A stretch of DNA of 64,000 nucleotides, taken from contig OZ365109.1 of assembly GCA_977030845.1 (NCBI GenBank), positions 57,660,001 through 57,724,000 on the forward strand. Reading direction: 5' to 3'. Shown here one piece after another: positions 16,301 through 49,245 of this stretch (position 1 is its first letter; the number at the start of each line of letters is the position of its first letter). Source of the DNA: Fimbriosthenelais zetlandica (lineage: Eukaryota). A model generated the notes under the pieces. That model was given only the letters and a program-made list of their open reading frames with translations. It did not search any database and had not been told where the DNA came from. Both the position numbers and the translations under genes were made by a program.

Positions 16301-19300
16301 TAGGACCTTCAAGCTGGGAGATGTATTCCAACAACAACTTTAAGGGACAGAAGTGTGTAGCTTCCCCAGGTCGTTATAACCACGAATGGTTCAAGACATG
16401 CCTTGAGTCTGATATCATTGCTTCTGCCCGAAGTAAGTTATACAGTATCTTCCACAGCCTTATCCAATGCCTATATCATAATGCATACACATCTGTATAA
16501 AACAGCCTATTATTTTAATATAAAAATTTACCAGTTATCAATTATTTTCTTATTTTTCAATGTGTAGAGGTAGAGGTCAACTTGCCTATGTGCCATGCAT
16601 CTAGTGGTTTGCAGACGTTGGAAGGTAAAAGTGGTAAGAAGCATGATGTGTTTGTAGCGCATAAGGAGGATGGTTCAGCCTGGCTCAGGTTCGGTGTGGG
16701 TGACATGGGCAACACGTGGAAAATGGTGGGTCTTAATCTACTGTCCTTTCCCAGCATACAGGCTTTATTCAACTGTTTCATAAAATGGGAGCCCACATGA
16801 CTTGTTAATATAGGTTCAGTCTGTATCATTTGCTCTCACAAGATTTTGACTTATGTTAGTTGCTCAGAAATCAACGCATGTAACTAAAGGAGTCTATAAT
16901 TATAGAAAAAGGCAGTTTCCACAAGAGCTGATACTATTTTCAGAAATGATTTATTTTTCAATGACATATTTTTTATTCTTTCAGGCAAGTGAAAATGCAA
17001 AATCAATGAATGTTAGCATTTTTGACCAAGCTGCCTTTTATGCCATGAATGATTTCGAAATCATTGGATGGGAAATCGACACGGATCTGACTTTCCATAT
17101 GAAGAGAGACGAGAGCTGGAGTCCTTCAAGGGTTAGACATTTTCCCTTTTCCAAAAATTATGTGAAAATTGTATAGGCACATATCTAATACTCTGTACGG
17201 GGCCAAAATGGCTAGGCATTGCGTCATGGAATATTTACTTTGATTAGGAAATATTTTCAAGCATCACTTCAGATTGTTTTGATTTCAGATTGCTGTGATG
17301 TACCTTGGATCACGTACCATGGACACCTTTAAGTTTTCTGAAGGTGACAGTGACAAGACAGATCTGACGTTCTCTGCTGACAAGATGCGAGTTTCTTGCT
17401 CTGGACGTATGGGCAATGATGGTAATCCCAAACCCAACGACTGTGGCAAAAATGGCTTGCCTGAATTTGGCAGCAACTCCAATCCACTAGCTCTTGCCGC
17501 TGTAAGTATGATCTTTTTACCTTACCAATTGTTATGGGCATATATACTAAAGTATTATTATCTCTTACTGACATTTTCGACTTTCATATTATTTTTAGCT
17601 TAGGATGGACCCTAGGGGGATTGGTTCCTATGCAAAGGACAATGAATTCTCACGTAATGCCTACACCTTCTATGGGACCTACTATTACATCTATGCCAAA
17701 CTGGCTGAGTGCCACGCCGCCACAGGTGATTTGAATTGATCGAAACACTTAATTTAATCATTTCATATTGCTATACATTTTAAATTTGGAATATCAATCT
17801 TGATTGTATGAGGTTTGATAACCTGTTTCTTCAGCAAGGGACAGTAGAAAATACCCCAATATAAGAAATACAATGAAAAGAAACTGCCAAGGTCAGCTTT
17901 GATTCTAGGACAGGTATTTAGACTATCAGGCCATTGTACAACCATACGCTAAAGCATTGCAACGCAGCCTATGGCATTATTTTCTTTTCTGTTATTACAA
18001 GGGTGCTTCAAGCGTTCCAAGGATATTGACTTCACCTTTGGACGTGTCCAAACTAAACAGAGTGACACTCCAAACACGTTTTACTTTGGTCAGCTGGGAG
18101 ATGACATTGATTCTTGTGAAGCTGCATGTAAAAACGACCGTGATTGCCTTGCTTACACATTCTACCAGGTATATTAGTTTTTTTATGATGCACATGATTG
18201 TTTCTTCCCCAATTCCATGAACTTTCTGTGGTATTTGGAGGCCCTATAGAATGCCTAAAGGTATATTTTTAAATTTATTAAGATCGTTCTTGAGGAATCA
18301 CTGACTGTGCTATAATTTCTATCAAGAATGTATTCCATCCGTTTGATGTGCTTTTAATTCATTAGGGAGATTATGCTGACCCTGCATTTGCTGGTGGTTG
18401 CTATGGTGTAGGGAAGGCTGAGGAAAGTGAGGGTGTTCGAGTTGAGGGTGTTTACTCTGGAAAATCTATGAACTGCGATTGTAAGTACACATATCTAATC
18501 AAACGCCATTGCTCACATCAGGCCCTGTCATTCAATGGATCCAGCCTAGGCCATCTTTAATTTCTATTAAGCTGCGATACTCCAATTTTAACGTTAACAT
18601 TTCAATAATTTGAATTATAAGCCCCTGATAAATTATAGGCCTGATGTTGGAAATCATGTCCTGGGAATTTGGAACTTTTCTACATACTACTCATGAGTAG
18701 TGTATGGAAATGGATATTGTACTCTGGCCATCTTTCCCTTTTTCTGAGCCCATGGCATGTATTTTGACTTAGATTATGATAATAATTTGTCTTTGTCCCT
18801 GCAGCTTTCATCCCTGACTATATGGTGGATGATATGTGGACTAGGAATGTGACAGGATGCCCCTGTCAGTTTGACACCACTCGTCGTGACTGTGCTTGTT
18901 GTTATGACAGAGCCTGTCAATGCGGCTACAAGCATAAATACCAATGTTCACTATGTGGATTCAGTGATCGTTGTGGCTATCGTAAGTATACCTTATACAA
19001 GGTTGGCCATTTAATAGTATAACCAGAAAAGCTCTCGTATGCCAATTTAAGTTCTAGACACTGAACATACTTTTTAATGCAGTCTCTTTAGGTGTACAAT
19101 TGAACCCCATATAAATTACATAATTATTCAAGCGACTATCGAAAGTAGGCCTATCATCCCCGAACTTAAAATTTCAGCATTCTTAACCAACTCCCATGAG
19201 TACATATTTGAGTATGACGATCAGATGTTGAATGACGACGGACGCCATTACCAGATCCCTGAGATGTGTGTCACCGGATGCACCATGACAGTTCGTGGTA

Positions 19301-48900: not shown

Positions 48901-49245
48901 ATACGAAACCCAGAAACCAATGTGGATGGTTGGACCAAGTCCATGTCTGGTTGTCAATGTTCGTTTGACCTGTCAGCCACTGACTGTGCCTGTTGTCAGA
49001 ACCTCGGTTGTCCCTGCCCTGCTACTAATAAGAACCAGTGTGTCACCTGTGGTCACAAAGAACACTGTGGCACCAAAGAGAATATCTTTGGTAGCAATCC
49101 ATACTGTGAACCCACGACTTGCCCTCGGAAGGTGTCCACTGTCTGGGACGATCATCCACACCTGATAAAGAAACCTGTGGAAGTACACCCAAAGGCCAAT
49201 GAAACATTCGTGGAAGACACTGAAAAAGTCCTTAATCTCGAGTGA
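30974..49245 (+). CDS. Gene B: tandem paralogue of gene A (about 2648 aa, 51 coding exons), same domain order
   Basis: Signal peptide [19 protein letters not shown]. The 51 hand-joined GT-AG exons sum to 7947 nt (divisible by 3), with stop TGA at 49243-49245. SRCR 32355-34855, EGF 35054-35587, AbfB 35791-36433, crystallins 36695-38031 and 43874-44297, PAN 39592-40110 and 44513-44809, WSC 41552-42037, VWA 45810-46825 (DASGS, TDG), F5/8C 47162-48116, 10-Cys modules 40218-40394 and 48572-49245. Confidence 0.88.
35319..35419. repeat. Short palindromic insertion with telomere-like internal units
   Basis: 13-bp perfect inverted repeats gggtgggagcgcc (35319-35331) and ggcgctcccaccc (35407-35419) enclose two ttagggttag blocks. 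It lies in intron 11 of gene B. Confidence 0.6.
35791..36433 (+). other. Gene B: AbfB/CBM42-like beta-trefoil domain
   Basis: [36 protein letters not shown]...YASDASFFI matches the AbfB signature F..vPGL....VSFE...PG.YLR....L......DA.F. Confidence 0.8.

What the first reader, a model, noticed from the sequence alone, without database searches (positions are those of the whole stretch)
18805..49245. Unnamed 10-cysteine module, six copies with invariant spacing
Seen at A 18805-18981, 29137-29325 and 29781-, and at B 40218-40394, 48572-48760 and 48896-. The consensus W-T-x4-G-C-x-C-x-F-x5-D-C-A-C-C-x4-C-x-C-x6-Q-C-x2-C-G-x4-C-G has no indels in any of the six copies. Position-matched copies resemble each other most (A1/B1 share YQCxLCGFxxRCG; A3/B3 share NKNQCVxCGHxEHCG), so the repeats predate the gene duplication. 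Each begins in a phase-1 exon, like a shuffled module. It does not match EGF, vWC, TIL, WAP or ShK spacing as I know them. Inference: a compact disulfide-rich fold, and the C-terminal pair could mediate oligomerisation.
Basis: partly seen in the sequence, partly recalled or inferred. Interest (0 to 1): 0.75.

Follow-up and report, generated by a model that had tools for sequence, protein, structure and literature searches.

The report
Uncurated ten-cysteine extracellular protein module
The six repeats are real coding exons for a small, disulfide-stapled protein module that is widespread in invertebrates and one protist relative of animals, but has no entry in the domain library I searched and no detectable structural relative, so it is a genuine but modest gap in protein-domain catalogues.

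Summary
All six stretches translate on the + strand to a roughly 50-residue module with spacing C-x-C-x8-C-x-C-C-x4-C-x-C-x7-C-x2-C-x5-C and no indels.

The modules sit in two tandem paralogous genes. Each models as 42 GT-AG exons and about 2,250 aa. The proteins look like secreted mosaics: SRCR x3, EGF x2, beta/gamma-crystallin-like, PAN, module, WSC, PAN, VWA, discoidin, module, module.

The module is one family, not a local oddity. A profile of the six copies finds 230 protein clusters. They come from nemertean, mollusc, brachiopod, annelid, amphioxus, hemichordate, crustacean and insect, and from the protist Corallochytrium. All named ones are "uncharacterized" or named after other domains.

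No Pfam model matches any of 145 instances. AlphaFold models are confident (pLDDT 90-91), yet no PDB, AlphaFold DB or ESM Atlas search gave a significant hit. Cysteines are lost only in pairs (C1+C4, C6+C9), which argues for disulfides rather than metal binding.

A discoidin-module-module C-terminal cassette recurs in several of these hits, and its intron phases are the same in the one nemertean gene examined. Oligomerisation by the C-terminal pair remains untested. Function is unknown. My leading guess is a rigid binding scaffold that accompanies glycan-binding domains.

The parts
18805..18981 (+). Module A1: single exon, phase 1 to 1, 177 nt (gene A, after the first PAN-like domain)
   Evidence: Translation, alignment, splice sites, own-genome profile hit at E 4e-27
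29137..29325 (+). Module A2: single exon, phase 1 to 1, 189 nt. It is the penultimate-type module, directly after the discoidin exons.
   Evidence: E 2e-27. The nearest relative is the penultimate module of a nemertean protein, 75% identical.
29781..30127 (+). Terminal exon of gene A: module A3 (core 29810-29968, terminal type), then a 50-aa tail with an extra C-x4-C, then the stop
   Evidence: E 5e-25.
40218..40394 (+). Module B1: single exon, phase 1 to 1, 177 nt (gene B)
   Evidence: E 3e-26.
48572..48760 (+). Module B2: single exon, phase 1 to 1, 189 nt (penultimate type)
   Evidence: E 1e-25.
48896..49245 (+). Terminal exon of gene B: module B3 (core 48925-49083), tail with C-x4-C, stop
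   Evidence: E 1e-23.
12275..30127 (+). Gene A, modelled part: 42 exons, all GT-AG with consistent phases, 2,248 aa, no internal stop, no TM-like segment. Order of parts: SRCR x3 (12275-14138), EGF x2 (14266-14687), beta/gamma-crystallin-like (15497-16432), unassigned (16535-17725), PAN-like (18002-18480), A1, unassigned (19178-19954), WSC (20073-20631), unassigned Cys-rich (21050-21623), repeat of the unassigned unit (22551-23501), crystallin-like (23662-24178), PAN-like (24417-24713), VWA (25742-27003), F5/8C discoidin (27455-28717), A2, A3.
   Evidence: A-versus-B conserved blocks, splice chain, translation check, Pfam on exons
32355..49245 (+). Gene B, modelled part: 42 exons colinear with gene A, 2,264 aa, no internal stop, same domain order
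10374..10430 (+). Candidate signal-peptide exon of gene A (Met, hydrophobic stretch, GTAAGT donor). Its phase 0 does not join the first modelled exon directly, so at least one exon in between is missing.
   Evidence: Inference only.
30974..31040 (+). Candidate signal-peptide start of gene B (Met followed by a hydrophobic stretch). The end coordinate is approximate.
   Evidence: Inference only.

Best explanation
The six stretches encode copies of an independently folding extracellular module of about 50 residues held together by five disulfides. The module belongs to a widespread domain family with no Pfam model.

Here it occurs three times in each of two old tandem paralogues. Each paralogue encodes a secreted mosaic protein of about 2,250 aa. 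One copy is internal. Two form the C-terminal end of a discoidin-module-module cassette that recurs in other phyla.

Shown:
- The exons, their phases and the gene models.
- Family membership across Holozoa.
- Absence of a Pfam model or a structural match.
- Paired loss of C1+C4 and of C6+C9.
- Position-specific subtypes of the C-terminal pair.
- Purifying selection.

Inferred: the module is a rigid, disulfide-stapled scaffold. Its conserved residues (Cys, Gly, W/Y, T, F/W, D) are structural, and three variable loops (C2-C3, C7-C8, C9-C10) carry the specificity. It spread by phase-1 exon shuffling. It most likely acts as a binding or positioning module next to glycan-binding or glycan-processing domains. 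I see no evidence that it is a catalytic or metal-binding unit.
For: Sequence and gene structure:
- Real coding exons with exact phase 1-1 borders.
- Complete, frame-consistent 42-exon models for both genes.
- For A versus B module pairs, pN is 0.18-0.20 and pS is 0.59-0.76. This indicates an old duplication under purifying selection.

Family:
- 230 clusters at E<=1e-3, with named members from eight animal groups and Corallochytrium.
- The dominant cysteine spacing of the family equals that of all six window copies.

Extracellular setting:
- The module co-occurs with F5/8C, CUB, D8C, VWD, EGF, TSP1, Fz, Ig, C-type lectin and trypsin.
- Among 52 homologues of at least 250 aa that start with Met, 23 have a signal-like N-terminus and 4 have a TM-like segment.

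Disulfides:
- Of 187 distinct instances, 153 keep all 10 Cys, 23 lack exactly C1+C4, 10 lack exactly C6+C9, and 1 lacks both pairs. None lacks a single Cys. The replacement residues vary across lineages.

Fold:
- AF2 gives pLDDT 89.7 for one module and 91.2 (pTM 0.77) for the pair. Both modules show the same four-strand pattern.

Cassette:
- 30 of 50 multi-module proteins end in an adjacent pair.
- Penultimate and terminal modules separate on the tree with 2 label changes among 54 rows.
- Discoidin directly precedes the pair in several hits.
- A nemertean gene has the same phase-1 introns around the pair.
Against: - No experiment or transcript evidence exists for this organism. No usable RNA run was listed.
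- Function is inferred from context only.
- Three of the five disulfides are unassigned, because the model coordinates could not be read.
- Only Pfam was searched. SMART, CDD, PROSITE and PANTHER could hold a model.
- Foldseek is weak on this domain. A true family member at 44% identity scored only E 1.9, so the negative fold searches do not prove a new fold.
- The exon-per-module rule fails in amphioxus.
Confidence: 0.8

Rival explanations
1. The module is a glycan-binding module, a small disulfide-rich lectin or CBM-like unit. Its conserved aromatic residues (W/Y before T, and Y-F/W after C2) would form the sugar platform. This is a functional refinement of the best explanation rather than a contradiction of it.
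For: In Corallochytrium the 8-Cys form is fused to GH114 glycoside hydrolases. In an environmental eukaryote it is fused to a galactosyltransferase. In animals its commonest partner is the discoidin domain (9 of 73), and it also occurs with WSC, C-type lectin and D8C. Conserved aromatic positions are W/Y/F at 96% and F/W/Y at 83%.
Against: Co-occurrence with secretory-pathway domains is expected for any extracellular module. The conserved aromatics may simply be the mini-core of a tiny fold. There is no similarity to hevein, CBM14 or any other known CBM.
Confidence: 0.25
2. The C-terminal pair is an oligomerisation device, playing the part that the C-terminal cystine knot plays in VWF and mucins.
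For: The pair sits at the extreme C-terminus in 30 of 50 multi-module proteins. These include VWD-containing proteins such as the VWD-C8-TIL-discoidin protein of Tubulanus and the VWDE-like proteins of molluscs and a brachiopod. The two positions are distinct conserved subtypes. The pair is predicted with pTM 0.77, consistent with a fixed unit.
Against: The cysteine count is even and cysteines are lost only in pairs, so no spare thiol is evident for an interchain bond. Single copies also occur at N-termini and internally. There is no positive evidence for self-association.
Confidence: 0.15
3. The module is a very divergent member of an already named cysteine-rich family, for example TIL, a TNFR-type CRD, laminin-type EGF or LDLa.
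For: The weak top rows of the fold searches are TIL, TNFR (CD40, CD27, 4-1BB), LDLa and EGF-type domains. TIL also has 10 Cys in about 55 residues. The C6-x-C7 ... C8-x2-C9 segment resembles the CxC...CxxC part of laminin EGF by eye.
Confidence: 0.1
4. The module binds metal, as a zinc-ribbon-like or metallothionein-like unit, and is not disulfide bonded.
For: It has a C-x2-C-G knuckle and very dense cysteines. There are faint sequence matches to the L37e zinc ribbon (E 0.36) and to metallothionein Pfam models (E 0.14-0.9).
Against: All those matches are insignificant. The context is extracellular. Cysteines disappear two at a time, in two independent pairs and in many lineages. That fits disulfides and not four-ligand metal sites.
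Confidence: 0.04

Closest known systems
TIL domain (Pfam PF01826, trypsin-inhibitor-like cysteine-rich domain)
   Same: About 55 residues with ten cysteines. It is an extracellular, mobile module that occurs next to VWD and C8 domains. One family member, P0008, carries both a TIL domain and the new module.
   Different: The cysteine spacing differs. No member of the family hits the TIL model. Structural similarity is only at noise level (E>=2, TM about 0.3).
C-terminal cystine-knot domain (CTCK) of VWF and mucins
   Same: Both sit at the extreme C-terminus of large secreted mosaic proteins, some of which contain VWD domains.
   Different: There is no sequence or fold similarity. The new module has an even cysteine number without an obvious interchain cysteine. 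Dimerisation has not been shown.
EGF-like and laminin-type EGF modules
   Same: They are small disulfide-stapled modules encoded by phase 1-1 exons and spread by exon shuffling. The conserved residues are mostly structural and the loops are variable. In the same genes, the EGF exons are also phase 1-1.
   Different: The new module has five disulfides, against three or four. The spacing differs. No Pfam EGF model is hit. The C1-C4 and C6-C9 bonds do not map onto the EGF or laminin-EGF patterns.
Invertebrate 'VWDE-like' proteins (D8C-VWD-EGF) of Haliotis, Lingula and Sinanodonta
   Same: They end in the same penultimate-plus-terminal module pair as the window's two genes.
   Different: The rest of the architecture differs: D8C, VWD and EGF there, against SRCR, crystallin-like, PAN, WSC, VWA and discoidin here. 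Their database names refer to other domains. The terminal pair itself is unannotated.

Membership tests
TIL (PF01826) | Match to the family HMM at or above the gathering score | tested here: not met
   No hit for the six copies at E<=10, nor for any of 145 members at E<=1. The same scan found a real TIL domain elsewhere in P0008.
TIL (PF01826) | TIL fold | tested here: not met
EGF, laminin EGF, VWC, WAP, ShK (Pfam models) | Match to any of these HMMs | tested here: not met
   None is listed for any module instance. The same library recognises the genes' true EGF exon at E 6e-9.
TNFR-type cysteine-rich domain | Structural superposition on TNFR CRDs | tested here: not met
   CD40, CD27 and 4-1BB rows have E 4-7 and TM 0.15-0.33.
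CTCK (C-terminal cystine knot) | HMM match, cystine-knot fold and an unpaired interchain cysteine | tested here: not met
   No Pfam hit and no fold hit. The conserved cysteines number ten, an even count, and are lost only in pairs.
Zinc ribbon / metallothionein-like metal binders | Significant HMM match, and cysteines acting as sets of metal ligands | tested here: not met
   Only E 0.14-0.9 matches were found. The pairwise co-loss pattern fits disulfides. Metal content itself cannot be tested here.
The new 10-Cys module family itself (as defined here by alignment A2) | Signature [DN]-x-[WYF]-T-x3-[TS]-G-C-x-C-x-[FWY]-[DN]-x4-D-C-A-C-C-x2-G-[GA]-C-Q-C-x7-C-x2-C-G-x4-C-G and a profile match | tested here: met
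   All six window copies match at E 1e-16 to 8e-20 against the 145-member profile. They have the family's modal spacing.
Other InterPro member databases (SMART, CDD, PROSITE, PANTHER, CATH-Gene3D) | Any named model covering the module | not testable with these tools
   Only Pfam-A, PHROGs, NCBIfam and PADLOC are offered. Source names of all inspected homologues are 'uncharacterized' or refer to other domains.

The most novel reading that the evidence does not exclude
The module is a previously unrecognised fold of glycan-binding domain that arose before animals. In Corallochytrium it exists as an 8-Cys form fused to GH114 hydrolases. Animals added a fifth disulfide (C1-C4) and recruited it as the C-terminal partner of discoidin domains in secreted adhesion or recognition proteins.
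Probability: 0.15. Interest if true: 0.65.

Novelty: new variant of a known kind. Interest (0 to 1): 0.5.

Why it matters
Small disulfide-rich modules are the building blocks of animal extracellular proteins, and most common ones have long been catalogued. This one stands out on four counts:
- It is found in at least eight animal groups and in a unicellular relative of animals.
- It is predicted with high confidence.
- It has no Pfam model.
- No solved structure resembles it at any detectable level.

Defining it would annotate the unexplained ends of hundreds of "uncharacterized" invertebrate proteins. Examples are a conserved insect CUB protein and the invertebrate VWDE-like proteins. It would also add a pre-metazoan element to the history of the extracellular toolkit and give structural biologists a compact new target.

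It does not overturn anything. It is a catalogue gap, not a new principle.

Tried and rejected
- **Homodimer test of the C-terminal pair** (P0008 residues 512-649, two copies). The tool was busy four times. It then returned "no answer": score 0.00, with the chain itself unfolded at pLDDT 33 without an alignment. This is evidence neither way.
- **Expression.** No RNA run was listed for 3.5 kb of gene A. One marine metatranscriptome held 8% of the words of the terminal exon. When laid on 24300-30200 it gave only three short partial contig pieces and no splice joints. It was not informative.
- **Fold searches** of both models gave nothing significant:
  - PDB with Foldseek.
  - PDB with VIA-align wide.
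  - AFDB clusters and Swiss-Prot.
  - ESM Atlas by shape and by features.
- **PDB by sequence.** Nothing was found.
- **Literature.** Four full-text searches gave no description of this module. The terms were the D-C-A-C-C motif, "ten conserved cysteines" and similar, and discoidin plus cysteine-rich domain. This does not prove that none exists.
- **Earlier notes of this scan.** Nothing near the locus.
- **Word-indexed protein search with a homologue's pair region.** It found only 4 proteins.
- **Naming the organism through the neighbouring Kelch gene.** This failed because the hits are unnamed.
- **Rejected readings.** Chance or non-coding repeat, metal-binding unit, and divergent TIL/EGF/TNFR. 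See the rival explanations.
- **Model coordinates could not be read.** For that reason three disulfides stay unassigned.
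Full report
**1. The observation**

Translating the six intervals in all frames shows one open + strand frame at each site. Each frame carries the pattern W-T-x4-G-C-x-C-x-F-x5-D-C-A-C-C-x4-C-x-C-x6-Q-C-x2-C-G-x4-C-G. In-frame translation from the stated first base fails only because each exon starts with the last two bases of a split codon.

The six copies align without internal gaps and share 20 invariant columns.

Exons 18805-18981, 29137-29325, 40218-40394 and 48572-48760 each follow an AG with a pyrimidine tract and end in C|GT(A/G)(A/T)G. 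That gives intron phase 1 on both sides. Positions 29781 and 48896 open the terminal exons, also in phase 1.

Position-matched copies are 67% (A1/B1), 69% (A2/B2) and 73% (A3/B3) identical. All other pairs are 45-55%.

Between paralogues, non-synonymous differences are 0.18-0.20 per site. Synonymous sites are near saturation at 0.59-0.76. The duplication is old and both copies are under purifying selection.

**2. The genes**

Protein-level comparison of the two halves of the window shows about 42 colinear conserved blocks. A simple splice-aware chaining of these blocks gives an uninterrupted 42-exon model for each gene, with all introns GT-AG and all phases compatible:
- Gene A spans 12275-30127 and encodes 2,248 aa.
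- Gene B spans 32355-49245 and encodes 2,264 aa.
- Neither has an internal stop, and gene A has no transmembrane-like segment.

Pfam on individual exons identifies SRCR, EGF, beta/gamma-crystallin (weak), PAN (weak), WSC, VWA and F5/8 type C. The order of parts is SRCR x3, EGF x2, crystallin-like repeats, an unassigned region, PAN, module 1, an unassigned unit, WSC, an unassigned Cys-rich unit, the unassigned unit again, crystallin-like, PAN, VWA, discoidin, module 2, module 3, and a short tail with an extra C-x4-C.

Candidate signal-peptide starts lie upstream of both genes at 10374 and 30974. The 5' ends are not fully modelled.

Most domain exons are phase 1-1, the classic signature of shuffled extracellular modules.

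**3. A large, uncurated family**

A profile of the six copies was searched against 1.84 billion protein representatives. It found 230 clusters at E<=1e-3, 72 at E<=1e-10 and 7 at E<=1e-30.

The named members are:
- A nemertean VWD-C8-TIL-discoidin protein.
- VWDE-like proteins of abalone, a freshwater mussel and Lingula.
- An annelid 3,398-aa protein.
- Amphioxus Fz-Ig-trypsin, TSP1 and matrilin-like proteins.
- Hemichordate discoidin and lectin proteins.
- An Artemia CUB protein.
- An 850-aa CUB protein conserved across Hymenoptera, Lepidoptera and Odonata.
- Three gene models of the unicellular holozoan Corallochytrium.
- One dinoflagellate transcriptome entry, which could be contamination.

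Every inspected source name is "uncharacterized" or refers to another domain.

In this 447-Mb genome, both the six-copy profile and the 145-member profile find only the six copies in the window.

The modal spacing of the family is exactly that of the window copies. That spacing is C-x-C-x8-C-x-C-C-x4-C-x-C-x7-C-x2-C-x5-C, seen in 77 of 155 ten-Cys instances.

**4. Not a named domain, as far as could be tested**

- Pfam-A gives nothing for the six copies at E<=10.
- Pfam-A gives nothing but metallothionein-type noise for all 145 aligned instances at E<=1.
- Full-length homologues show Pfam domains everywhere except over the module.
- PDB sequence searches with both profiles are empty or noise.

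Other InterPro member databases could not be searched.

**5. Structure**

With the 145-sequence alignment, AlphaFold2 models copy A2 at mean pLDDT 89.7. The model has four short strands and two 3-10 turns.

The C-terminal pair of the closest named homologue (Tubulanus, 75% identical to A2 in the penultimate module) models at pLDDT 91.2 and pTM 0.77. The same secondary-structure pattern appears twice.

Neither model finds a relative:
- Foldseek against the PDB: best E 3.3 (single module) and 6.7 (pair).
- AFDB clusters: best E 1.9, and that row is itself a family member at 44% identity.
- Swiss-Prot models: E>3.
- ESM Atlas: TM<=0.51 to unrelated archaeal proteins.

That true relative's poor score shows these searches are insensitive for this tiny domain. 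"New fold" is therefore plausible but not proven.

**6. Disulfides, not metal**

Among 187 distinct instances:
- 153 keep all ten cysteines.
- 23 lack exactly C1 and C4.
- 10 lack exactly C6 and C9.
- 1 lacks both pairs.
- None lacks a single cysteine.

The losses occur in different proteins and lineages, with different replacement residues. This is what is expected for disulfides C1-C4 and C6-C9. It is not expected for four-ligand metal sites.

All three Corallochytrium proteins carry the 8-Cys form without C1-C4. That bond may be an animal addition, or it may have been lost. The direction is not resolved.

In the models, C2 lies across the first hairpin from C3, in the same register as C1-C4 (DSSP strings). 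A C2-C3 bond is therefore a weak inference.

**7. The C-terminal cassette**

Of 50 homologues with two or more modules, 30 end in an adjacent pair within 60 residues of the C-terminus.

On a tree of 185 instances, penultimate and terminal modules need only 2 label changes among 54 labelled rows. The two positions are therefore distinct, old subtypes. Penultimate copies typically begin D-[VI]-W-T and terminal copies D-G-W-T. Support for individual branches is poor with 53 columns, so only the clustering is claimed.

The linker between the two modules is short and nearly constant in length.

In several hits a discoidin domain directly precedes the pair. One environmental protein even has WSC-discoidin-pair, like the window's genes.

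In the Tubulanus gene, the exon before the pair ends in phase 1, the penultimate module is one phase 1-1 exon, and the donor falls after the same C of the codon following C-G-T as in the window. That fits inheritance of the cassette as a unit.

By contrast, the three tandem modules of an amphioxus gene are cut by introns inside the modules. The one-exon-per-module structure is therefore not universal.

**8. How it probably works**

What is conserved is mainly Cys, Gly, two aromatic positions, a Thr (96%) and Asp. What varies is three loops. That is the profile of a rigid scaffold module like EGF or TIL.

Its partners are extracellular binding domains. In protists and environmental eukaryotes they are carbohydrate-active enzymes, namely GH114 and a galactosyltransferase.

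My committed reading is a disulfide-stapled binding or positioning module that works beside glycan-binding or glycan-processing domains. I give about 25% that it binds glycans itself, and about 15% that the C-terminal pair mediates self-association.

For the latter there is only positional analogy to the C-terminal cystine knot of VWF and mucins. The even, pairwise-lost cysteines argue against a covalent interchain link. The complex prediction returned no verdict.

**9. Novelty and verdict**

The sequences are public but, as far as I could test, the module is undescribed. That rests on Pfam 2025, PDB, AFDB, Swiss-Prot models, ESM Atlas and four full-text literature searches.

It is a new family within a very familiar kind of thing. 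It is remarkable mainly for its breadth, its age and the complete lack of structural neighbours. Interest is moderate.

Noticed in passing
window 56200-58152 (-): An intact single-exon ORF of 650 aa encodes a BTB-BACK-Kelch protein. Its best database relative is 86% identical and carries precomputed BTB, BACK and Kelch Pfam families. All hits are unnamed.
   Followed up: partly
window 16535-17725, 19178-19954, 21050-21623, 22551-23501 (+): Several conserved exon groups of gene A, matched in gene B, have no Pfam hit. One unit is repeated within the gene (19178-19954 and 22551-23501), and one is Cys-rich (21050-21623). These may be further uncurated extracellular domains.
   Followed up: partly
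window 6506-7480 (+) and 5155-5493 (+): A 324-aa highly acidic, low-complexity open frame and a 112-aa frame lie upstream. They are probably exons of another gene upstream of gene A.
   Followed up: no
window 50541-50939 (+): A 132-aa open frame has a hydrophobic start and a Ser/Thr-rich, mucin-like body. It lies just downstream of gene B.
   Followed up: no
window 9503-9605 (+) and 45407-45509 (-): A short stretch upstream of gene A matches an inverted stretch inside an intron of gene B at about 80% amino-acid identity. It is probably a dispersed repeat or transposon fragment.
   Followed up: no
P0043, P0045, P0059 (Corallochytrium limacisporum gene models): All module copies in this unicellular holozoan are the 8-Cys form lacking C1 and C4. 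Two of the three proteins carry a GH114 glycoside hydrolase domain.
   Followed up: partly
L014 9561-10673 (Branchiostoma floridae gene for P0021): Three tandem modules lie between the Fz and Ig-trypsin parts. Introns split them inside the modules, unlike the one-exon modules of the window and of Tubulanus.
   Followed up: yes
P0150 and relatives (Hymenoptera, Lepidoptera, Odonata): A conserved insect protein of about 850-890 aa has one N-terminal module followed by a CUB domain. In a bumblebee the gene spans about 216 kb. It is uncharacterized in every source seen.
   Followed up: partly
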